DNA from: Octopus sinensis
Taxonomy: Eukaryota
Direction: 5' to 3'
Assembly: GCF_006345805.1 (NCBI RefSeq)
Contig: NC_042998.1
Span: 47,492,001-47,556,000, forward strand
DNA: 64,000 nucleotides
The position numbers and the translations under genes were made by a program. Shown in pieces: positions 18,831 through 53,065 of this stretch. The notes beneath the pieces are model-generated. The model was given only the letters and a program-made list of their open reading frames with translations, searched no databases and was not told the DNA's origin. The first letter of the stretch is position 1. Every line of letters begins with the position of its first letter.

Positions 18831-19078
18831 AGCATCTATGTGCGTGTGAAAGAGGGCTGATGATTTTGACGTGTGCGTGTGTGCATATGTAGATGTGTGG
18901 CTGATGGTGTGGGGCTGGGAAGTGGTCCATGCTAGTGTGTGCGTGGTGGTGTGATGTGATGTGGTGTTGTGTGGTATGGTGGTGTATGGTGTGCTGGTGT
19001 GTGATATGGTGGTGTGTAGTGTGGATATATATATAAACACACGCTCACACGCACACACATATATATATAAATATATAG

Positions 19079-19125
<47 letters not shown>

Positions 19126-19197
19126 CATACATCACATATTGTATACATATATATATATATTGAACGCGCGCACACATACATACATACATACATACAA

Positions 19198-19368
<171 letters not shown>

Positions 19369-19531
19369 ATAGTTATCGCCATACTAATATGGCATTCTTA
19401 TAAATAATAAAAAAGCTGTCCGCTTATTAGCTCCATGAGGCCATCGCCTAAGTTAGCTATTTGATACACAAACTGTATCCATATAACCTTCGAACAAGGG
19501 AGGTCAGTCGCTCCACACTACTTGACCGGCA

Positions 19532-19573
19532 GCTACAGACGCGTTTCGGGGTATTGCCCCTTTTCAATGCAGC
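19532..19573 (-). ncRNA. Minimal type I hammerhead ribozyme, U3-A8 variant (copy 1)
   Basis: Minus strand: GCUGCA (stem I) UUGAAAA (core 3-9) GGGG-CAAUA-CCCC (stem II) GAA ACGCGU (A15.1 plus palindromic stem III) C17 / UGUAGC (stem I', 6 bp with one G-U). Predicted GUC cleavage between + strand 19537 and 19538. Confidence 0.85.
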
Positions 19574-19893
19574 GTAGCCAGCCAGTAGTGTTCGCTTCCG
19601 ACAATCTCTGTTCGATGGTTTTATTTACCTAGTTTCGGTGGAATACATCCACTTGTTTTCAATAATAGAAATATTAAAATAACTAGTCTCTCTAAAAGAG
19701 AACAGCGGCAGCGTTCCGGGAAAAATATAGTTATCGCCATACTAATATGGCATTCTTATAAAAAATAAAGAAAAACCTGTCCGCTTATTAGCTCCATGAG
19801 GCCATCGCCTTAAGTTAGCTATTTGATACACAAACTGTATCCATATAACCTTCGAACAAGGAGGTCAGGTCGCTCCACACTACTTGACCGGCA

Positions 19894-19935
19894 GCTACAG
19901 ACGCGTTTCGGGGTATTGCCCCTTTTCAATGCAGC
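19894..19935 (-). ncRNA. Minimal type I hammerhead ribozyme, U3-A8 variant (copy 2)
   Basis: Identical 42-nt motif; predicted cleavage between 19899 and 19900. Confidence 0.85.
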
Positions 19936-20067
19936 GTAGCCAGCCAGTAGGTGTCGCTTCCGACAATCTCTGTTCGATGGTTTTATTTACCTAGTTTCGG
20001 TGGAATACATCCACTTGTTTTCAATAATAGAAATATTAAAATAACTAAGTCTCTCTAAAAGAACAGC

Positions 20068-20490
20068 TTCTACACACAAAAGAAAGAGGTTGGTGGAGAA
20101 GGGGGAATTTTTCTATGATGTTTGTGGTTGTTTTGAAGGGCTGTTTGTGTCGTGGTGGTGGTGGTGGTGGTGGCAGAGTTAGAGTGAATTAACGATGCGA
20201 GAGAGAGAGAGGAGAAAAAGAGAGAGAGAGAAAGAGGGAGGGAGAGAAAGACAGAGAGCAGTTATTGAGAAAAGCTTAAATATAGAGGCCCGTTACAAGA
20301 AAGAGGAAAGAATGTGCTGGAATCTAGTGAAAATTATCATTATTATTATTAGTAGTAGTAGTAGTAGGAGTAATAGTAGTAAAAATGGTTTATTGGTTTG
20401 TCTGGTAGCAGACATTATTGAGTAAGTGGACAGGGTGTCGGGAGGGGTGGGATTTAGTCCTCTTATTGATTTATTCATAGAAGTCTTTTG
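20068..20490 (-). mobile_element. Probable 3' tail of a Penelope-like ORF plus low-complexity 3' UTR
   Basis: Minus frame ...IYKQKTSMNKSIRGLNPTP... loosely fits the end of a GIY-YIG domain (E..I.K.K..LN); directly continuous with the ribozyme units. Weak protein-level evidence. Confidence 0.4.
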
Positions 20491-20526
20491 TTTATATATG
20501 CACATTATATATATATTATATATAAT

Positions 20527-22272
20527 CTCATCGTTCATCTGGCAGTCATGTCAGAAATATCTCTCTGAAACTTCTCAACCATTTTAGTGTATTTCTCTCG
20601 CTCCATCGTCAATTCCTGCTGAAGACGACGGCATTCTTTATCCCGTTTGCGAAGGGCTCCTGAATTAGAATTGGTTGGTTTCTTGCTTTTGTCAGCAAAT
20701 TCCTTTCTATTCATCACCTCAGCCAGTTTATTCACAGCCTGTATCTTCTTCAGTCTCTCATCCTGCAACAACTTCCTCAACTGCTCGAGTTCACTGATAT
20801 TATTCTCAGATTTCTCATTCTTCAAATCATCAGCCATTTTATTCATTCTATTTATTAATTCATCTTTCTCGTTTTGAAGTTGCTCGTTATTTTTCCATAT
20901 TCACGTTTAGAATCTTCCAGCACATTAATGCCCGATTCTTTACGAGAAAGTTCTGCTTTATGTCGTGTTTTCAGTTCCTTAATTTCCAGTTGTAGCATGG
21001 TCTTTTCTTTCTCAAGATCTGAGAGATTCTCTTCAGCCACTGTACGTGCTATTTGTTCAGATTCAATCTTTGATGTGGCCATTTTCAAGTTTTTATTCAA
21101 CCTTTCATTTTCTTGCTCCATTGTAGAAATGTCCACAGATAAGTCTTGGTGTTCCTTCTTATTATCTTTGATTTCTTCCTTTAATTCCTTCACTTGAGCT
21201 CGGTATAAAGATGAGAAATAAGATTCTGCTTCAAACTGGTCTTGTAATTCTCGCATCTGAAGTTCTGCTAACGATGATTCTTCCTTTAATTTTCTCAGTT
21301 CTTCTTCAGCCTTTTGCTTCTCGTCTCGCAGTTCTTTGAGATCCTTATCATACTGCTTTTCCCGTGCCTTGGCCTTGTTCAGTTCTTGCGTCTGGGTTTT
21401 CAAGTCACCTTGCATTAAGTTGCGTCTCTGTATTTCTTGCTCCACTTGAAGATTCAAATTCTTCACCTTTTCTGTTTCTGATTTCAAATCCCTCTGTATA
21501 ATCTCCACTGTCTGTCTCATCTGGGACAGATCTAAAGACAGTTCACTCTTCTCTTTCTCAAGCTGCAGCTTCTCACTTTCAGCTGTTTGCCGCACACTCC
21601 GCTCTTGCTCAATTCTCACCTGAAGTTCTTTCATTGACTCTAAATTGACTTCTGATTTTGAAGATATGCTCGCCTGACATGCACTGAACTGGGACATTGT
21701 TGCCTGATGGCTTTCAACTTCGTGTTCCCATTTCCTCAGAAACGTATCCTTTTCCAGTTCTGCATTGGCACAGTCCTTCTCCAGTTGGAACACCATTTGT
21801 TGAGCTTTCCGAAGTTCACTTGAGTTTTCTACTTCCTTGTTTTTCAGCATTTCATTTTCATTTTGAAAATTATTTAATTTTTCTAACAAAGTATTTGATT
21901 GCTCTGACCTTTTTGGTTCAATAAGTTTTTCTCTTCTGCCAAAAGAGCATGTAAATTTGCAATTTCTTTCTCAAGTGACATTTTCACTGATTGTGTTTCT
22001 AAGTATTTGTTATTCAGTTCTGTATAACTCTGGTCCACATGACTGTATCTCTGTTGTAATTCTGAACACATCTTCTTAAACCGATTCACTGACTCTGTGC
22101 TTGTTCGTATTTCTTCTTCAGCTTCTTGAAGTTTTTGTTGCAACTCTATTATCTTGTCACTAGTCTGAGTACTGTTGCCCTGTAAAGCAAGTCGGTCAGC
22201 TTGTTCTTGAAGAAATTGTTTTTCCAAATTCTCAAGGTCACTCTCTTTCTTCTTGCGGAGTTCCAATTCAAT
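20527..22272 (-). pseudogene. ROCK: Intronless fragment of Rho-associated coiled-coil kinase (central coiled coil, Shroom-binding and Rho-binding regions; no kinase or PH domain): processed/transduced copy with 3 single-base frameshifts
   Basis: MRELQDQFEAESYFSSLYRAQVKELKEEI vs vertebrate ROCK MRELQDQLEAEQYFSTLYKTQVKELKEEI; LKKIQAVNKLAEVMNRKEF vs LKTQAVNKLAEIMNRKDF (RBD); no splice sites at either end. Confidence 0.92.
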
Positions 22273-22530
22273 ATAAGAATGCCATATTAGTATGGCGATA
22301 ACTATTATTTTCCGGGAACGCTGCCGCTGTTCTCTTTTAGAGAGACTTAGTTATTTTAATATTTCTATTATTGAAACAAGTGGATGTATTCCACCGAAAC
22401 TAGGTAAATAAAACCATCGAACAGAGATTGTCGGAGAGCGACACCTACTGGCTGGCTACGCTGGCATTGAAAAGTTATGTGGAGCGACTGACCTCCCTTG
22501 TTCGAAGGTTATATGGATCAGTTTGTGTAT
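22272..22530 (+). mobile_element. Inverted copy of the ~360-bp unit with the hammerhead deleted; runs into the assembly gap
   Basis: TATAAGAATGCCATATTAGTATGGCGATAACTAT...; CATTGAAAAG joins directly to TTATGTGGAGCGAC at ~22474, so ~50 nt are missing. Confidence 0.9.
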
Positions 22531-22630
22531 NNNNNNNNNNNNNNNNNNNNNNNNNNNNNNNNNNNNNNNNNNNNNNNNNNNNNNNNNNNNNNNNNNNNNN
22601 NNNNNNNNNNNNNNNNNNNNNNNNNNNNNN
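22531..22630. other. Assembly gap (100 N, true size unknown)
   Basis: Run of N. Confidence 1.
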
Positions 22631-23243
22631 AGGAAGAAAATACAGAAAAAAAGATTTCAGAAATATTTGTATATGCGTGTATGTATGTCGCATGTATGTG
22701 TGAAATTACATATTCATGTGTGCGTTACACTTTTTAATACTTTCCTTATGTGATGTGTTACATGTGAAGAACATAATAAATGATTGCATACTTGTATTGT
22801 TTTTCCAAACATATCAAATGGCTTAAGCATGTTTAGAATTAAAATGTCACTGTGCACTCCTGTAGATAACTTCTATGTTCTATATACTACCACAAGCATC
22901 AAGCAACAGTTTCAGCCACTAGGGAGCTTCTATATGGTCGCTTGATATACTAGAAATAGCTGCCAGATCTCCCTTAAATTATACCACATCACTGTCTAAG
23001 AAAATGGCGGTTTGGATAGTCAGATCCTTGGCCCACGACTAGATCTTCACAGCTGCAATGCTTTTAATCATAAAATCCCGTACGACTGAGGTTGATTTGG
23101 GACTAAGTAACAGCCACCACTACGGCTGTCATAACCTCTATCTAGCACTACGAGAACCATCAGTATTCAAAAAATTAGCACATTCATAATCGTCTTCTTC
23201 ATCTTCACCACTAGTAGCTGCAGCAGCCGGGTAATAAGCTTCG

Positions 23244-23302
<59 letters not shown>

Positions 23303-24349
23303 TATATATAGTATGTATATATATAATAAATATATTCTGCCAAATTGCTACCTTCACTATTAATGGCTGCAGGTTGAAAAAAATGAGTAAAGCGCCAAAC
23401 AAAATACCTTTACATATTATGTATTGGGGCTGAAGTCGACTTTATCTTTCTCTCTACAAAAGAGAGCCGGTCAAATAAAATACCAGTAATATATTTGTAC
23501 CATCAAGTCGATTGATTTGGTGGTTCTTGCTGATTACTCGCCCATAAAACAATTATTACATTATGAACTTATAAACATATATTGAGCCATTATTTACTGA
23601 TAGAGCCTACTTTTAATTAATGTACGTAGAATTGCTGTCGTTTACACATAGCCACCGTCACCTTCTTTATACAATAAGAAGCCAACACAGTGATCTCTAT
23701 GGGGGTTGCGTCCCATGTTAGAAATAGTAGCTAAATTCTTTTCGCACCATATGTTAAAAAAAATCCTAAGAAAAAAGACTGATGCATTTGTTAATGTACT
23801 TGTAAGTGCACTATGTCTGAAAATAAGATAAAATTGTCATGATAGATGCATCTTCATATACATGAACTGGTCAGAGCTGAGCTTGCAGTGAAACATATTA
23901 CGTGAATGCATCTGATGCTAAAATTGTCCATTTATTTTCTTTAAAAAGCCAAGTGAATTGCTTATCAAAAACAATGGGAGTCGCAACGAAGTCCGAAGAT
24001 AGTGTACAAATGTTGCAGCTCTTGTGTTGCATATAAATATATGTAACTGTATATAATATAACTGTACATGAATCATGTGAGATTTTGATAATGTACCGTG
24101 GTGACAGGTGGGCAGGTGGGGGTCACTTCCGTAGGCACTCGCGAAAATCAGTGCAGCAAACTCTGTATCATAACGTGTGCGTTATAATACGGGGTTATAA
24201 TACAGATGAAATAAGTACTAGGCTTACAAAGAATAAGTCCTAAGGTCGATTTCTACGACTAAGATCCTTTAAGATGGTGCTCCAGCATGACCGCAGTCAA
24301 ATAACTGAAACGTATAAAGGAATATATATACATATATATATATATATAT

Positions 24350-25858: not shown

Positions 25859-26743
25859 CACGGTGCGATGGATAAATTGTCCCCATTTTACAATTTTAAT
25901 TTGCGCATGCGCATTATTCGTTTTTGATTTTACTCGACTACACAGATTGTAGGGTCAGTTGGGTACCGTCTGTGAGAAAAAACAGCACCATGACGTAATT
26001 CATTCTGCCAGAAATTTGGAAACGACATGCTGTACTGCTTGGCATTCGCGCCGGAAGCTCCAATACGAACATCTGAGAGTGTTTGAGTGTCAATCTGAGG
26101 ACATGATAATCTGAGGTCATGACAATCTGAGAGTGATAAAAATCAAATATCCAGTCAACATCAGGGTGTTTGGAGTGATCACTAATGATGGTTACGTTAC
26201 ACCTCCATGCATCTTCCCACACGGCTCCACACTCAATACGGAAGCGTACATCAAGTGCCTGGAGGAGGTAGTGCTGCCGTGGGTGAAGAGGGTGGCTACT
26301 GAAAGACCCTATGTCTGGCGACAGGACTCTGCACCATGCCTCACGAGCAGAAGAACCCAGTCATGGCTGCCAGTCAATTTCTGCGACCATGTCACCCTTA
26401 ACATCTGGCCAGCTAACTCCCAGATTGCAATCCCCTTGACTACTATGTGTGGGGCGCAGTTGAGCGAGAGACCGACAAAACTCCTTGTAACACCAAAGAT
26501 GAACTGAAGGCAAAGATTATGGCAGCATTTACCAATTTAAATAAGGAGAGCGTCCAGAAGAGTTGCAGGAAATTCCGAAGTCGTCTGGAGGCTGTGTTTG
26601 AAGTCAATAGCGATTTTATTGAATAAATTTATTCTTTAGTATTTCAAGATATGTTTATGTAATTTTAGTAAATATATCTGTTAAAATGAGATGTCAGTGT
26701 CATTTTTTATTTTTGCGTATTTAGACCACAGTTTATTCACCTG
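25859..26743 (+). mobile_element. Internally deleted Tc1/mariner (maT/DD37D-like) transposon
   Basis: TIR CACGGTGCGATGGATAAATTGTC after TA; ORF with VFGVI..DG...N...YI..LE.V.LPW...QDSAPC..S..TQ.WL...WP.NS; degenerate 3' TIR GACCACAGTTTATTCACCTG followed by TA. Confidence 0.9.
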
Positions 26744-32817: not shown

Positions 32818-33132
32818 TAGTATGTATGATGACGATATTCCGGAGTTGAGTTAATCGAGTTCAATCTCATAAAGGGAAATCATAAAGCCTCACTTCCGAT
32901 TGTTTTATTCAGGTTCTGTTTGTGTGATAACATTTGAAATTAGGATATGTATATCCTGCAGTTAGCGGCACCTTTTGGTGGGAAACCGCCGAGTGAGTGG
33001 CTAAAATATTTTTGCTTCTCTACATTCACTTGCTTGATGGGCTGATTATATTCTTGCGAAGAAATTTAATTGGTAACATATAAAGATTGAAAGAGCGGTG
33101 CGAGCACATGTCACAATGCACAAACGTTTCAA

Positions 33133-33913
33133 GTGTGAGACCGTGTGGAAAGATGAATGGAGGCATAACATCGATATCACTAGTGATCACTCCAAACACC
33201 ATGATGCTGACTGGATGTTTGATTTTTATCACTCTTGGTACGTGTTTTCGGGAAACGGCAAGCCAACGGTTGTTCTGTGTGTTCCCTATCTGATCCTGGC
33301 AGAAATTTTTCTCGTCTGAGAAAAACCAAAGCATGTGCAGTTGGAGGGGATGCTTGAGTTCGTTCAAAAATCTTTGTATGGCGGTCTTTTCTTTTGTCCT
33401 TGATGGCTTGGGATAAAAATTAGCCCTTTCTCATCTTGTATGAAGAATACTGAATGTCTTCATGCACTACCTCCCTGATAAGAAGCTCAGACATTCTCAT
33501 GTTCCTGGCGATGGACCTGATTGTCTTGGAGAGATCGTTGTCAATCATGGTTTGGATCTCACCAACAAATCAAAGAGTTCTTTTCTTATCAGAATGATCA
33601 GGGTGAGTTTTTCGAGCTGCCGTACCTTTGTAATCACCATTAGACTTATCCAGCTCTTCCGAATCTTTAGCACTGTCCTCAGACTGACACCCTAACACTC
33701 TGAAATGTTCGTATTGGAGCTCCCAGTGCGTATGCCAAGCAGTACAATATGTCGTTTCCAAATTTCTGGCTGAGTGAATTCCATCATGGTGCTGCTTTTT
33801 CTCACAGACGGTGCCCATCTGATCCTACTATACTGTGTAGTCGACAAAATCAAAAACAAACAATGCGCAAAATTAAAAATGTAAAATGGTGACAGTTTAC
33901 CCATCGCACCCTG
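33133..33913 (-). mobile_element. 5' half of a maT/mariner transposon, same family as 25859-26743, 3'-truncated
   Basis: TIR complement GACAGTTTACCCATCGCACCCTG followed by TA; translation WFFSDEKNFCQDQ..NTQNNRWLA...VPRVIKIKHPVSIMVFGVITSD.DVMPPFIFPHGL. Confidence 0.9.
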
Positions 33914-48238: not shown

Positions 48239-50660
48239 CGCACCTATATCAATATAAATCTGATATGTGTATGTATTAGGTATGCGTGTAAGTAAGGATG
48301 TGGCTATTAAAAGGGAGACAGTTTAAAATGTATCAACACTTGATACGATAGACTGTTTTTTTCTTTCTTTCATTTTTTTTTTTTACATCGTTTCGTGGCC
48401 TGTGTAGTTTGATTTCCAACCAAACACCACTGTTTGCTGTCGTTTTTTTTTTTTCTTTTTCTTTTTTGTTTCTTCACTGATTCACTTTTCTGAGTTGTAT
48501 TTTGAGAACGTGCGCCTGTCTTATTATCAAAACATTTGACAGATATCTAGCGTTCTTTCCCTGTTTTGTTTTGTCTTGTTACATTATTTGCTTTATATTT
48601 GTTTTTAATGTGGTGGTAGTGGTAATGGGTTGTTTGAATGTAGCTGAAATGACCCATTTTTCAGCAAGCGTAAGCCCAAGAAACAGACTGTCCTAATGTT
48701 AGATTATAGTGCAGCTTTTAACCATAATGACATGTGATGACGGCCTATCCTCTTTTAAATGTCGTCTTTACCAGCTGGACACCTATCCCGAAGGAAAGGA
48801 AAAGATACTTATAAAACATTTCCTCGTCTACTTCCGGGTCTGTTCGCTCCTGTTGTGACATGAAATTTCTTACCACGTTTTGCTTCATGATCAAGAAGAT
48901 AAGTCGGGAGTATTTTTACTAAAACCCCTGAATAGCAAATAGGTCAAATGCCAAAATATATAATATACTGACATTGCAGTTTAGATGAATTGGGCTTCCC
49001 AGCTTGGATTTCTTTTGATATGCTTTTGCAATGAAATTCTGTAATTTTGCAATTTATATTTTGAGATTATAAAAAAAAAATGGGCACGATATTGTGAAAG
49101 AATAGTAGTACAAGAGATTAAAGAAAAACAAAACAACAAATTTCCGTATTAATTTCTTAGAATTTCTGTCCCGCTAAGATCAGTGATGGCCTCAAGCGGA
49201 GCAACAGATGTTAAAACACTCAGATAGATTATAAGATTGTCTTGTGATATAGAAGTAGCAGAAAAGCGATTCTTCTGCAAAGCTTAGGTTTAGTGTTGTT
49301 GTTGTTGTGCAGCTCTGGTCAGATTTAATCGTGCAAACCTAAGAATTTGGCGTGTATTCGTTAGCTGCCTGAAACATCCATATTTATACGAATATGTAAA
49401 AGGAATATGATAGAGGCCTTCGTATAAAGAAAGTCGTTCTGTTGGTTTTAAATCCTAGTTTGTATAAGGTTCTTCTTCTACATTAAAGATCACAGCCCCT
49501 CACCACCACTCTCTCTTGGCTTACTTCGGAGAAAGAACTTTTACACTCTGTCTTCTAACAGCATTTTTCTGTGATGTCATCTTCATGAATAGATTATTAA
49601 TTACTTAATTAAGCCACCCAAAACAATAATTCAACTGTTCTTTATATTGAAATTTATCAGTAGGTAAAAGAAAGAGTTACTCATGAGTTTCATTTGAATT
49701 GCATTCTATAAGAGGCTTAAATGAAACATATGTTGGGTTTACTGTCAATATCTAATTACATAAAAAGAAAATTTCATTCAATATCTAAAATGAATTGTTG
49801 TCAATAAAATTTTATCGTCATCTTTAATGACGAAAGATTTTCCAACTGTACTATGTGTTTCAATCTGTTCCCTGATCACCATCAGAGAACTTATTCTTAG
49901 TGGTGTAAACCCTACCAGGATGGATCCGAACAAGGAACTATTATTTCTAAAATATAATGATATCTTTATCCATTAGATCACTAACCCATGTGCTGTCAAT
50001 GTAATTTTATTGATACAACTAAAATCTTTTAAAGCATTAAATCATTTAATAAACCCCACCGAATTTATTAGACTGCGTTGTTTGACTGTGATGTAATTTA
50101 TTATCGATGTCTAGCATTCATATAAGTCTAGGTGAGATTCTCTTTGGGGATGGAATCCATGGTTAAAGACAAAACATGCCACCGTTATAAAATTTTAAAT
50201 AAGTGATTACAATCATCTTAGCTTTCTTAGATTTCCGTTAAAAGGGTATTGCTGAAACAGATGCTCCAGCATTCGCTAAACTCCAGGTTAAGGTGGTACA
50301 CTTACAGGAAAATGAATATACATAATAGTGATCTCAAGTAAAAACCTTTCCTCAGAAATTGAGAAAGGCATGCATGTCACAATTTCTTATTTCAACTTCA
50401 GTTATAAACCTGAGTAGTTCCCTTTTTTATAATATTAATGTATTATATTTACCAACTGTTCTCACAATGATGTTTATAGAAAGTAATGGAAAAATGTCTG
50501 ATGACCCAAATAATTATTTTTATGAGTAATATAATTTAAGAGTTTGCGGAATGTTTTATAGCATTATTTTTTCTTAATTTTCAGTTTGCTTTCATGTTTG
50601 TAATACTGGATAGTTAATATAGCTTCAATAAAATTATTTCCTCCTTTCCTTTTTTTGTAG

Positions 50661-51007
50661 ACTATTAAATGAAAAAGAGAAGCGACCTTTCATTGATGAA
50701 GCCGAGCGTCTACGAGTCCAGCACAAAAAAGATTATCCCGATTATAAATACCAACCGCGTCGTCGGAAACCTCTCAAAACTTCTGGCGTTAGCAATTCAG
50801 GATCAGTCGATGTACAGCACCACCTCCCACCAGGCATGATGTTAAAGTCACTTCAGAACTCACCCACTCCACATATGAGTGATGGCGAGTCTAGCAATTG
50901 CTCAAGTCCTCATAACGGCTCACATGGGCCACCGACTCCACCAACTACACCAAATCAGCAGGAACTTATAAAATGCATGGCAGATCGTTCACGTCTCAGA
51001 AGCATGG
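50661..51007 (+). CDS. SoxE: SoxE transcription factor, internal exon (C-terminal half of the HMG box plus GPPTPPTTP motif)
   Basis: Polypyrimidine-TAG acceptor; (R)[36 protein letters not shown]; the intron inside the HMG box at 'W-R' is at the SoxE position; [10 protein letters not shown]; donor G|GTAAGT, phase 1. Confidence 0.97.
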
Positions 51008-52103
51008 GTAAGTGTCTCGACGAAGTTTAAAATAACGAAAATGTGCTTCTACCTAGTTCATTTGATTTTAGTTATAATCTATCTTTATAGAAATATATAG
51101 GATAGCATATTTAATGGATATGCTTCTTTAGAAATAAAGTTCTTATTTTTGTCGACTTCCCGAATTTGATTTGTAAATTTGAGTATTCCCACATTAGCAC
51201 GAACTCATAAATAATAAAGGAGATGTTGGTTTGGTCAATTGTTGTAGACGATATCTCTATGACTGATATTCGTTGTATCAATCCTGGGAAAGACAACATC
51301 GATTCTTGTGGGATTCAAACCAAGAACGTTAACGAACGTAAATAAAGGCTTTTTGTTTGGCACGCGGCCTTTTTTGTCACTCATACATGTAATGATGGCC
51401 TACCATGAACACGTAAGCGTTACTTTTCTAGATAAGGGGTTCTCAAACTGACAAATAATTGGTCATCCCCTCTAAAATAATAGGAAAATTTTTTACTCAT
51501 TGCTCTTTATTAAGAATTTTTAATTTAAGCACATGGTCGGCTATTTTGCAGTGAGGGTGTTAGTCGACACCATCGACCTAGGAAGGATGGAAGGCAAAAT
51601 TGATCTTAGCAGGATTTGAACTCAGAAAATAAAGAGCTACAAAAATATCAAAATGCAACATTCGCTCTTTATTAATGACAAAACAAAATAGAATGTGCAT
51701 TTACATATTTCATCTTCCTTTGTTGTGATGTTGAACAAGTTAAAATTTTTATGACTTTTTTAAATATATTGATCATTGCAATCCATGCACCTCTTTATTC
51801 AATCCTCACAACCAACCACCACCTATTTTATATCGAACAACATTCTATCCGACACGAGTAAAGAGTCCTTCTATGACGCACAGGGGGAATATTACACTAG
51901 GTTTCAGTATGACAAGTAGCTACTGGCAAATTAGAAATGAAAGCAATAAAAGAGATTGAAGATCAGAATATTATCTTTAGTACATAATAGATATAAAGAA
52001 AGGCAATCCTTTACGTTGCATCTAGTTATATGAAACATCTTCATTTATTTTTATAATCATTGGTTAGAAGACTTCTCATGATCTAAATATTTATGTATTT
52101 CAG

Positions 52104-53065
52104 GAGGATTACATTCCCAGGCCCACCCCATCGACTTTAGTCGGGTAGATCTACGTGAACTTGGAAATGAAGTAATGAGTTTGGATAACATTGATGACCA
52201 TGAACTTGACCAGTATTTGGCAATGAATCCAGGTGCCATCCTCTCGCACCAACATAACGTCGCTGCGGCGGCAGCAGCTGCCACGGCCGCCGCAGCAGCC
52301 CAGTCTGATAACGGATATACGTGCTACAACCAGGTCAGCCCGACTGCTGTCTCTACTGCTCCTACTTGGACTAGCAATTACCGAGTTTCTGCAAGTGCTT
52401 GCGTGCAGCCTTTCAATAATGGAAGCCCAACCAGCATTCCTTATGATTTATCATCGCAACAGCAACAACAACAGCAACAACAACAACAGCAACAACAGCA
52501 ACAACAACAGCAGCAACAGCAGCAACAGCAACCACCACCTGCACATCAAGCGGCCAACGGTCACATAGGAATGGCTTCTAATATGGTACCAAACAACAAT
52601 GCCAACAATGCTAATGTGAACAATTCGAACAACACGAATAACCCTAACAATGGTGCAGTCGCTAATAACATAGGACATCATCATCGCGGACCAGTTTATA
52701 CAACAGCCGCTGAAAACGAATGTAAGTTCCGCGAACCTAATTCCCCGGCAACCATCAAACTGGAACACCTACAAGCACCCCCACCACCAGCACCCCATGC
52801 GCAACCGCAACCACTGCCGCCTCACTTCCGTTGCGAAACAAACAAATATGAAGAATATGACAATACAACATCTCGTTATTCTATGAACGATGACCAGATA
52901 TACCCAGTAACAAACCACCAACAAACATATTACTCAAACCATAATGGACAAGTAGTTTCTAATCCTTCTCCACCGACTTATCAGTATCTCACAATGGCTA
53001 GACAAACCTTTAACCCCATCGTCGCAGCAGGACCTGGAGAACAACCATGGGAACGTTATACATGA
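52104..53065 (+). CDS. SoxE: SoxE last coding exon (IDFSRVDLRELGNEVMSLDNIDDHELDQYL domain, polyA, polyQ, C-terminal region)
   Basis: TATTTCAG acceptor in phase with the previous exon; matches the SoxE motif 'IDF..VDI.EL...V......D..E.DQYL'; ends EQPWERYT-TGA. Confidence 0.95.
52457..52531 (+). repeat. Coding CAA/CAG repeat encoding 25 glutamines
   Basis: Counted from the sequence. Confidence 0.95.

What the first reader, a model, noticed from the sequence alone, without database searches (positions are those of the whole stretch)
19369..22530. Host mRNA (ROCK) captured inside a hammerhead-bearing Penelope-like/retrozyme cassette
Seen: (TA)n | unit | unit | PLE-like tail | short TA tract | 1.75-kb ROCK coding fragment with no introns or splice sites | inverted unit | gap. 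ROCK is in the same sense as the ribozyme units, and both its ends are abrupt junctions with element sequence. Known: PLE insertions typically have tandem 3' pseudo-LTRs with hammerheads and an inverted terminal segment at the 5' side, and vertebrate ROCK splits this region over many exons. Inference: a PLE reverse transcriptase switched template from its own RNA onto ROCK mRNA (or copied a chimeric transcript) and finished with the usual inverted end. This would be ribozyme-retroelement-mediated gene-fragment transduction, a rarely documented route to retrocopies.
Basis: partly seen in the sequence, partly recalled or inferred. Interest (0 to 1): 0.9.

Follow-up and report, generated by a model that had tools for sequence, protein, structure and literature searches.

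The report
ROCK retrocopy fused to ribozyme repeats
An octopus genome segment holds an intron-free internal piece of the ROCK kinase mRNA joined head-to-head to a 361-bp ribozyme-like tandem repeat, which suggests but does not prove that this repeat's copying machinery can also copy host mRNAs.

Summary
From left to right: (TA)n, two tandem 361-bp units (96% identical), 0.43 kb of unique low-complexity DNA, a short TA tract, 1.75 kb of ROCK coiled-coil plus Rho-binding coding sequence on the minus strand, an inverted 5'-truncated unit array, and the window's only gap. ROCK identity is solid, and the closest protein is an Octopus bimaculoides ROCK model (96%). The piece reads through a conserved intron position, has no splice sites or poly(A) at its ends, and no other ROCK exon lies in the 64 kb. 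Rfam finds no hammerhead. A hand-built type-I descriptor hits only the two units, on the ROCK-sense strand. The motif has the usual metazoan helix sizes and a U3-A8 core pair, a variant documented in Penelope-like elements (PLEs). The units fit a non-LTR retrozyme. Nothing shows that the "PLE-like tail" is PLE, and no reverse transcriptase (RT) or GIY-YIG endonuclease gene turned up among the ORFs tested. All three frame breaks are homopolymer deletions and there is no in-frame stop, so the copy is young and the sequence under-polished. Best reading: PLE-type reverse transcription at a TA tract used ROCK mRNA for one arm and retrozyme RNA for the other. This is plausible but unproven, and it rests on one locus next to a gap.

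The parts
19025..19368 (.). TA/CATA microsatellite. It abuts the 3' end (minus-strand sense) of the left unit array and is the presumed insertion target.
   Evidence: Sequence read; repeat families. The junction reads ...GGCGATAACTA|TTATATAT on the minus strand.
19369..19729 (-). Unit 1 of the 361-bp tandem repeat (retrozyme-like monomer, 41% GC).
   Evidence: The cleavage-site-to-cleavage-site monomer folds at -121 kcal/mol, z=-6.2.
19532..19573 (-). Hammerhead-like type-I motif of unit 1: GCUGCA-UUGAAAA-GGGG(CAAUA)CCCC-GAA-A(CGCG)U-C|UGUAGC. Predicted cleavage is after the C at 19538.
   Evidence: Descriptor hit (0 of 100 shuffles). The 96-nt context folds with z=-4.75. No Rfam hit.
19730..20067 (-). 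Unit 2, 96% identical to unit 1. It lacks about the first 22 nt of the monomer at its 5' (right-hand) end.
19894..19935 (-). Hammerhead-like motif of unit 2, identical to that of unit 1. Predicted cleavage is after the C at 19900.
20068..20494 (.). It is most simply ordinary local DNA lying between two insertions.
   Evidence: Only microsatellite matches elsewhere in the window. Only low-complexity ORFs.
20495..20526 (.). Short TA-rich tract that abuts the 3' end of the ROCK fragment. Presumed priming site.
   Evidence: On the minus strand ROCK ends ...CAGATGAACGATGAGAT|TATATATAAT, while the parent protein continues ...NDEMQAK.
20527..22272 (-). Intronless internal fragment of ROCK mRNA, about 580 codons covering the coiled coil and the Rho-binding domain. 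It has no start codon, no natural stop codon and no poly(A). Three 1-nt homopolymer deletions lie near 21905-21930, near 20893 and near 20547. There is no in-frame stop.
22272..22530 (+). Inverted unit array whose 5'-truncated end faces the ROCK 5' end (head-to-head). It holds the last 34 nt of one unit, a unit-unit junction and about 225 nt of the next unit, with a 38-nt deletion that removes the ribozyme core. It runs into the gap.
   Evidence: (inverted repeats I1, I7, I8).
22531..22630 (.). 100-N assembly gap that hides the far end of the inverted array and the right-hand target junction.

Best explanation
This is a young processed copy of an internal 1.75-kb segment of the octopus ROCK mRNA. 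It is fused 5'-to-5' with a 5'-truncated tandem array of a 361-bp hammerhead-type repeat (an animal non-LTR retrozyme). A second dimer of the same repeat lies 0.46 kb away in the same orientation as ROCK.

Proposed mechanism (inferred):
1. The Penelope-like RT/GIY-YIG machinery thought to mobilise such repeats nicked a TA-rich site.
2. One 3'-OH primed on ROCK mRNA through AU/TA microhomology and copied about 1.75 kb.
3. The opposite 3'-OH primed on multimeric or circular retrozyme RNA.
4. The two cDNAs were joined at their 5' ends.
This gives the head-to-head form typical of PLE insertions, but with a host mRNA replacing the element on one arm. The left dimer would be a separate insertion of the same family at the neighbouring (TA)n.

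Shown: the anatomy, the ROCK identity, the missing intron(s), the ribozyme-like motif and its strand, and the TA tracts at both co-oriented 3' ends.
Inferred: which enzyme did it, the two-primer geometry, and that the assembly is correct.
For: - Intronless internal cDNA. The fragment reads through the position where bird ROCK1 has an intron (IIRR|LEETNN) and where homology in the O. bimaculoides model P0003 begins (LEDSKR). It also reads through the bird MQA|QLAEE intron position. The bird locus shows at least 13 exon boundaries across the homologous span.
- There are no splice signals at either end and no other ROCK exon in 64 kb.
- There is no poly(A), and the 3' end is internal to the mRNA. 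That speaks against a classical poly(A)-primed retrocopy.
- The units fit the published retrozyme definition: a 361-bp tandem repeat, 41% GC, and a strongly self-paired monomer.
- The ribozyme-like motif has helix I of 6 bp, helix II of 4 bp, and helix III of 1 bp closed by a palindromic CGCG loop. This is the architecture PMC4209133 describes for most metazoan type-I hammerheads. The same paper reports the U3-A8 core variant in Cercyon PLEs.
- Partial tandems, an inverted 5'-truncated copy at the 5' end and (TA)n targets are described PLE features, and such insertions are known to break assemblies.
- Both minus-sense 3' ends, of unit 1 and of ROCK, abut TA tracts.
- There are zero in-frame stops in 573 codons that offer 336 one-step routes to a stop codon. 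This implies little decay since insertion.
Against: - No RT or GIY-YIG ORF was found in the region or in the 20 longest non-repetitive ORFs of the window. No autonomous partner is identified.
- Rfam's hammerhead models do not score the motif at all. The descriptor was written after the motif had been seen. The two copies are identical there, so covariation cannot be tested. U3-A8 minimal-helix-III ribozymes cleave poorly in vitro.
- This is a single locus, and the right-hand junction is hidden by the gap, so no target-site duplication or second 3' junction can be checked.
- Homopolymer errors in both ROCK and the units suggest low-coverage long-read sequence.
- No other copy of the unit could be retrieved from any accessible collection.
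- No paper in the library documents mRNA capture by PLEs or retrozymes.
Confidence: 0.45

Rival explanations
1. Independent events in a TA-microsatellite hot spot. A ROCK retrocopy was made by some other reverse transcriptase (LINE or LTR element) or captured during break repair. It was later truncated on one or both sides by unrelated insertions of the retrozyme-like repeat or by deletions.
For: The region is full of TA tracts, which are preferred PLE targets. The left dimer is separated from ROCK by 0.46 kb of unique DNA, so at least two events are likely anyway. Internal mRNA fragments flanked by retroelement sequence are known from LTR-mediated retroposition.
Against: The ROCK/unit junction is direct, with no TA tract or filler. 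No ROCK continuation lies to the right of the gap or anywhere else in the window. There is no poly(A), LINE tail or LTR sequence at the ROCK ends. The head-to-head geometry and the TA tract at the ROCK 3' end would both have to be coincidences.
Confidence: 0.25
2. Assembly artefact. One or both ROCK junctions were created by a chimeric or mis-joined long read at a contig end inside a repeat. The retrocopy and the repeat arrays are not adjacent in the real genome.
For: The right junction lies only 259 bp from the window's only gap. The three ROCK frame breaks and most differences between the units are homopolymer-length changes typical of under-polished long reads. PLE tandem/inverted structures are known to cause assembly problems.
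Against: An intronless ROCK segment must exist somewhere in genomic DNA for it to be assembled at all. Both of its ends meet features linked to the same family: a unit on one side, and a TA tract followed by units on the other. The structure is not the symmetric palindrome that a missed-adapter read would give.
Confidence: 0.18
3. One cDNA was made by serial template switches, or from one chimeric transcript: units, then 'tail', then ROCK mRNA, then an inverted end.
For: All pieces from unit 1 to ROCK are co-oriented on the minus strand and contiguous. The reverse transcription of retroelements is prone to template switching.
Against: It needs the unique 0.43-kb low-complexity stretch plus a TA tract to be a third RNA template, for which there is no evidence. 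The ROCK 3' end is not at an exon boundary or a GT donor, so a read-through or spliced chimeric transcript is not indicated. RNA-to-RNA switching does not give an inverted 5' unit.
Confidence: 0.1
4. It is a genuine giant exon of the functional ROCK gene, with repeat insertions in the flanking introns.
For: It is a long open coding sequence with no in-frame stop.
Against: There is no AG/GT at the ends, and the homology stops mid-codon in a TA tract. No kinase, PH or C1 exons lie within 20-40 kb on either side. The O. bimaculoides gene model and bird ROCK1 share an intron position inside the fragment.
Confidence: 0.02

Closest known systems
Metazoan non-LTR retrozymes (tandem 150-450-bp repeats with type-I hammerheads; Cervera & de la Pena 2020, PMC7229834)
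   Same: A 361-bp tandem monomer with 41% GC and one type-I hammerhead-like motif per monomer. Helix III is tiny and palindromic (ACGCGU), which suits dimeric cleavage. The monomer RNA is highly self-paired. The size is close to the 350-390 bp reported for mussel.
   Different: The core has U3-A8 instead of C3-G8 and is not scored by Rfam. Only three copies are visible. Expression, circularisation and genomic copy number are unknown. One array is fused to a host cDNA, which the papers read here do not describe for retrozymes.
Penelope-like element insertions (pseudo-LTR partial tandems, inverted 5'-truncated copy at the 5' end, (TA)n targets; Craig et al. 2021, PMC8557442; Cervera & de la Pena 2014, PMC4209133)
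   Same: Tandem terminal units carrying hammerhead motifs, a head-to-head inverted 5'-truncated copy, TA microsatellite at the 3' ends, and an assembly break within the structure. The U3-A8 core variant is documented in Cercyon PLEs.
   Different: There is no RT/GIY-YIG ORF. The position where an element body would sit is occupied by host ROCK cDNA (plus 0.46 kb of unique DNA).
LTR-mediated chimeric retrocopies (Tan et al. 2016, PMC5131818) and LINE-1 chimeras with cellular RNAs (PMC13174262)
   Same: An internal, poly(A)-less piece of a host mRNA is joined directly to retroelement sequence, with at most 1-2 nt of possible microsimilarity at the junctions. It is young and co-oriented with element sequence on one side.
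   Different: The flanks are ribozyme-type tandem repeats rather than LTR or LINE sequence. The 5' flank is inverted, which points to two-ended priming rather than simple RNA-to-RNA template switching.
L1 twin priming (5'-inverted L1 insertions; from my own knowledge, Ostertag & Kazazian 2001, not checked here)
   Same: Two target-site 3' ends each prime a cDNA, and the products are joined to give an inverted/direct structure.
   Different: Here the two arms would come from two different RNAs, and the enzyme would be PLE-type. Nothing about this step is demonstrated.

Membership tests
Hammerhead ribozyme, type I | Conserved catalytic core (C3 U4 G5 A6 N7 G8 A9 ... G12 A13 A14 ... A15.1-U16.1, H17) | tested here: inconclusive
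   The motif reads UUGAAAA...GAA-A...U-C. Every conserved position matches except the C3-G8 pair, which is replaced by U3-A8. PMC4209133 reports this as a natural covariation in PLE hammerheads.
Hammerhead ribozyme, type I | Three helices around the core, with helix I open | tested here: met
   Helix I has 6 bp plus an extension, helix II has 4 bp (GGGG/CCCC), and helix III has 1 bp with a CGCG loop (ACGCGU palindrome). See (z=-4.75). The descriptor gave 0 hits in 100 shuffles of 64 kb.
Hammerhead ribozyme, type I | Scores above threshold with the curated covariance models | tested here: not met
   No Rfam hammerhead family matched at the gathering score or at E<=10, even in a 121-nt search.
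Hammerhead ribozyme, type I | Self-cleavage | not testable with these tools
   This needs in vitro transcription of monomer and dimer constructs.
Metazoan non-LTR retrozyme | Short (150-450 bp) tandem repeats of low GC, each with a type-I hammerhead | tested here: met
   361-362 bp period, 96% identity, 41% GC, one motif per unit. The definition is quoted. The caveat on the ribozyme core applies.
Metazoan non-LTR retrozyme | Highly self-paired monomer RNA | tested here: met
   The 362-nt monomer folds at -121 kcal/mol, z=-6.2, and 0 of 100 shuffles fold as well.
Metazoan non-LTR retrozyme | Many dispersed genomic arrays, expressed as circular RNA | not testable with these tools
   No cephalopod genome or transcriptome is searchable here. 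Pattern scans of the three collections found nothing.
Penelope-like element | ORF with a telomerase-like RT and a GIY-YIG endonuclease | tested here: not met
   The ORFs of 19000-23000 are either ROCK or low complexity. The 20 longest non-repetitive ORFs of the window gave no RT or GIY-YIG Pfam hit. Shorter degraded fragments were not screened exhaustively.
Penelope-like element | Partial tandem terminal repeats plus an inverted 5'-truncated copy at the 5' end, with microsatellite ((TA)n) targets | tested here: met
   compared with the description. This is an architectural resemblance only.
Processed retrocopy of ROCK | Homology to ROCK mRNA with the parental introns absent | tested here: met
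   Homology is shown. One conserved intron position is read through with direct support from the O. bimaculoides model boundary, and a second by comparison with the bird locus. The parental octopus locus itself could not be fetched.
Processed retrocopy of ROCK | LINE-type hallmarks: 3' end of the mRNA, poly(A) tail, target-site duplication | tested here: not met
   The fragment ends inside the coding sequence at ...QMNDE and is followed by a TA tract, not poly(A). A target-site duplication cannot be tested because of the gap.

The most novel reading that the evidence does not exclude
The reverse-transcription machinery that mobilises hammerhead retrozymes or Penelope-like elements in cephalopods can take a host mRNA as template for one arm of its characteristic head-to-head insertion. 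That would make poly(A)-less, internally truncated retrocopies at TA microsatellites. It would be a route to gene-fragment retroposition not documented for this retroelement class.
Probability: 0.35. Interest if true: 0.72.

Novelty: new variant of a known kind. Interest (0 to 1): 0.5.

Why it matters
How Penelope-like elements integrate is not understood. Why they form tandem and inverted structures, and how non-LTR retrozymes are mobilised, is also open, and no in vitro system exists. A chimera in which a host mRNA replaces one arm of such an insertion would be a natural experiment. It would show that the enzyme can prime on an unrelated RNA by TA/AU microhomology, and that the two arms are made from separate templates. 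It would also add a third retroelement class, after LINEs and LTR elements, as a source of retrocopies in animals, in a lineage (cephalopods) where the origin of retrocopies is little studied. If it is only a coincidence of insertions or an assembly error, it is an ordinary pseudogene in a repeat-rich region.

Tried and rejected
- Rfam at the gathering threshold on the whole window, at E<=10 on 19300-22540, and at E<=10 on 121 nt around the motif found no hammerhead. The two weak hits (scaRNA, proV) are noise.
- The parental loci of the O. bimaculoides ROCK model (P0003) and the chiton ROCK2-like protein (P0001) are not on record. A bird ROCK1 locus was used instead.
- Scans of metagenome, genome and viral contig collections for the ribozyme pattern, and of metagenomes for ROCK relatives, found nothing. 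These collections hold essentially no cephalopod DNA.
- A protein search with the poly-Q exon at 52175-53065, meant to pin down the species, gave only a 34% hit. The species is therefore 'an octopus, either O. bimaculoides or a relative'.
It was replaced by ORF-wise scans, which found no RT or GIY-YIG.
- A giant-exon reading was rejected: no splice sites and no neighbouring ROCK exons.
- A palindromic missed-adapter read artefact was rejected because the structure is not symmetric.
- Helitron-type or other DNA-level gene capture was rejected because the fragment lacks introns.
Full report
WHAT IS THERE

The window is AT-rich, microsatellite-laden animal DNA. The best protein match of the coding fragment is an Octopus bimaculoides ROCK gene model: P0003, 96% identity by BLASTP over the overlapping 22% of the query and 94% over 119 aa by tblastn. 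The source is therefore an octopus, either that species or a relative.

- TA/CATA microsatellite up to 19368.
- Unit 1, 19369-19729.
- Unit 2, 19730-20067. It is 96% identical to unit 1 and, read on the minus strand, lacks about the first 22 nt of the monomer.
- A unique stretch rich in simple repeats, 20068-20494.
- A TA tract, 20495-20526.
- ROCK-coding sequence on the minus strand, 22272 down to 20527.
- Unit sequence in the opposite orientation, 22272-22530.
- The only gap in the window, 100 N at 22531-22630.

The inverted segment contains the last 34 nt of one unit, a unit-unit junction and about 225 nt of the next unit. It is therefore itself part of a tandem array. Its 5'-truncated end faces the 5' end of ROCK, and it runs away from ROCK into the gap.

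THE ROCK FRAGMENT

Three minus-strand ORFs of 127, 344 and 103 aa join into about 580 codons of coiled coil plus the Rho-binding domain. The evidence for ROCK is:
- Pfam PF08912, E=3e-11.
- A chiton ROCK2-like protein, E=1e-88.
- The ROCK1 Rho-binding domain structure 1S1C, E=5e-7.

The fragment has no start codon, no natural stop codon, no 3' UTR and no poly(A). On the minus strand it ends ...CAG ATG AAC GAT GAG AT|TATATATAAT, whereas the octopus protein continues ...NDEMQAK. Neither end carries AG/GT splice signals.

No kinase, PH or C1 exon of ROCK is detectable anywhere else in the 64 kb, so this is not the functional gene.

Evidence that introns are missing:
- A bird ROCK1 locus (L001) shows at least 13 exon boundaries in the homologous span.
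- One bird boundary is IIRR|LEETNN, with acceptor ag|CTGGAAGAA. It aligns exactly with the point where the O. bimaculoides gene model changes from unrelated sequence to true ROCK homology (LEDSKREYGK). This implies a conserved intron in the octopus parent. The fragment reads GINVLEDSKREYGK without interruption.
- The fragment also reads across the bird MQA|QLAEE intron position.
- The parental octopus locus could not be retrieved, so the other junctions are inferred.

AGE AND SEQUENCE QUALITY

All three frame breaks are single-base losses in or beside homopolymer runs:
- GAGAAAAAC or CCAAAAAGG, near 21905-21930.
- GGAAAAAT where P0003 requires six A, near 20893.
- GCCAG where GCCCAG would give DMTAQMNDE, near 20547. 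DMTAQM matches the EMQAQL pattern of other ROCKs better than the MVTQ of the gene model does.

Most differences between units 1 and 2 are likewise homopolymer-length changes or compensating one-base shifts.

The 573 in-frame codons offer 336 single-step routes to a stop codon, yet none is present. P(0 stops) is about 0.1 at 2% neutral divergence and 0.035 at 3%. The few amino-acid differences from P0003 are conservative (D/E, K/R, I/L).

Together these points suggest a young copy in under-polished long-read sequence. The differences from P0003 are more likely species or allelic differences than pseudogene decay. This is inference.

THE REPEAT UNIT

Rfam finds no hammerhead at the gathering threshold, at E<=10 on 3.2 kb, or at E<=10 on 121 nt.

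By eye, the minus strand of each unit carries GCUGCA-UUGAAAA-GGGG(CAAUA)CCCC-GAA-A(CGCG)U-C|UGUAGC. I wrote a type-I descriptor that requires:
- a C3-G8 or U3-A8 core pair;
- helix II of at least 3 bp;
- GAA;
- helix III of at least 1 bp, closed by A...U;
- H17;
- helix I of at least 5 bp.

It hits only these two sites in both strands of the window, and nothing in 100 dinucleotide shuffles. The descriptor was written after I had seen the motif, so the statistic is indicative only.

The 96-nt context folds into an extended helix I with z=-4.75. The monomer from cleavage site to cleavage site (362 nt) folds at -121 kcal/mol with z=-6.2.

Comparison with the literature:
- PMC4209133 states that most metazoan type-I hammerheads have helix I of 6 bp, helix II of 4 bp, and helix III of 1-2 bp capped by a 2-4-nt palindromic loop, and that they work as dimers. 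It also reports a U3-A8 covariant core in Cercyon PLEs of Schistosoma, with about 1,300 hits. The motif here has exactly those helix sizes, and ACGCGU is a perfect palindrome.
- PMC7229834 defines animal non-LTR retrozymes as 150-450-bp, low-GC tandem repeats with type-I hammerheads, 350-390 bp in mussel. The unit here is 361 bp and 41% GC.

I therefore file the unit as retrozyme-like with a variant core. Catalysis is untested.

The inverted copy has lost the core through a 38-nt deletion.

WHAT IS NOT SUPPORTED

- The 'PLE-like tail' (20068-20494) matches nothing in the window except microsatellites and encodes only low-complexity ORFs. It looks like ordinary local DNA.
- No RT or GIY-YIG domain was found in the region's ORFs or in the 20 longest non-repetitive ORFs of the window.
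- No other copy of the unit could be obtained.
- Two full-text searches found no paper documenting mRNA capture by PLEs or retrozymes. That is compatible with novelty, but it also means there is no precedent.

MECHANISM

PLE insertions are described as partial tandems, often with an inverted 5'-truncated copy abutting the 5' end. They have (TA)n as a preferred target in several clades and tend to break assemblies.

Here both minus-sense 3' ends abut TA tracts: unit 1 as ...GATAACTA|TTATATAT, and ROCK as ...GATGAGAT|TATATA. The ROCK 5' end is fused, without filler and with at most 1-2 nt of ambiguity, to the 5'-truncated end of an array pointing the other way.

Simple RNA-to-RNA template switching from ROCK mRNA onto retrozyme RNA would give a co-oriented 5' unit, not an inverted one. 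A single linear chimera would also need the 0.43-kb unique stretch to be a third template.

The most economical reading has two steps. First, the left dimer is a separate insertion at the large (TA)n. Second, the ROCK-plus-inverted-array structure is a PLE-type two-ended insertion at the small TA tract. One target 3'-OH primed on ROCK mRNA by AU/TA microhomology, and the other primed on multimeric or circular retrozyme RNA. The two cDNAs were then joined 5' to 5'. Every enzymatic step of this is inferred. I give it about 0.45.

Rivals:
- Unrelated retrocopy and retrozyme insertions in a TA hot spot, 0.25.
- Assembly chimera next to the gap, 0.18.
- A genuine ROCK exon, 0.02.

COMPARISON WITH KNOWN SYSTEMS

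The closest documented phenomenon is LTR-mediated retroposition. There, internal poly(A)-less mRNA pieces are flanked by retroelement sequence and joined at microsimilarities (PMC5131818). LINE-1 chimeras with cellular RNAs are a second example (listed).

The present case differs in the flanking element, which is a ribozyme-bearing tandem repeat of the PLE/retrozyme world, and in the inverted 5' arm. If real and mechanistically linked, it is a new variant of a known kind, chimeric retroposition by template choice of a retroelement RT.

VERDICT

As a single unverified locus beside a gap it deserves moderate interest (0.5). Its value would rise sharply if reads confirm the junctions and other arrays of the same unit prove to be fused to other host cDNAs.

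Noticed in passing
window 50632-51027 (+) and 52175-53065 (+): An ORF piece matches the C-terminal half of an HMG box (Pfam E=2.5e-5, just below the curated cut-off). About 1.1 kb downstream is a 296-aa poly-Q/poly-N ORF with no close relative in the protein database. They are probably exons of a Sox-like host gene about 30 kb from the locus.
   Followed up: partly
window 26115-26504 (+) and 33029-33430 (-): Two ORF remnants encode related peptides (KIK[YH]PV.I.VFGVIT.D..V.PP.IFPHG.TL). From memory they look like Tc1/mariner-type DDE transposase fragments. Pfam gave no hit.
   Followed up: no
window 22272-22530 (inverted unit), deletion near 22468: The inverted unit copy has a 38-nt deletion that removes exactly the ribozyme core from A9 through the 3' strand of helix I, so this arm could not self-cleave. 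It is unclear whether this is a real deletion, an RT skip across the hairpin or a sequencing error.
   Followed up: partly
window 19379-19394, 19737-19752 and 22280-22295: A 16-nt palindrome, GCCATACTAATATGGC, sits at the 3' end of each unit and 8 nt from the ROCK/inverted-unit junction. It could form a hairpin near the priming or joining point.
   Followed up: no
window 19369-22530: The three ROCK frame breaks and most differences between the units are homopolymer-length changes, while an exon-like ORF elsewhere (52175-53065) is intact. The stretch next to the only gap looks like under-polished long-read sequence.
   Followed up: partly
window 23246-23330: Another (TA)n tract lies about 0.6 kb to the right of the gap. 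It could be the right-hand edge of the target region if the hidden array ends near there.
   Followed up: no
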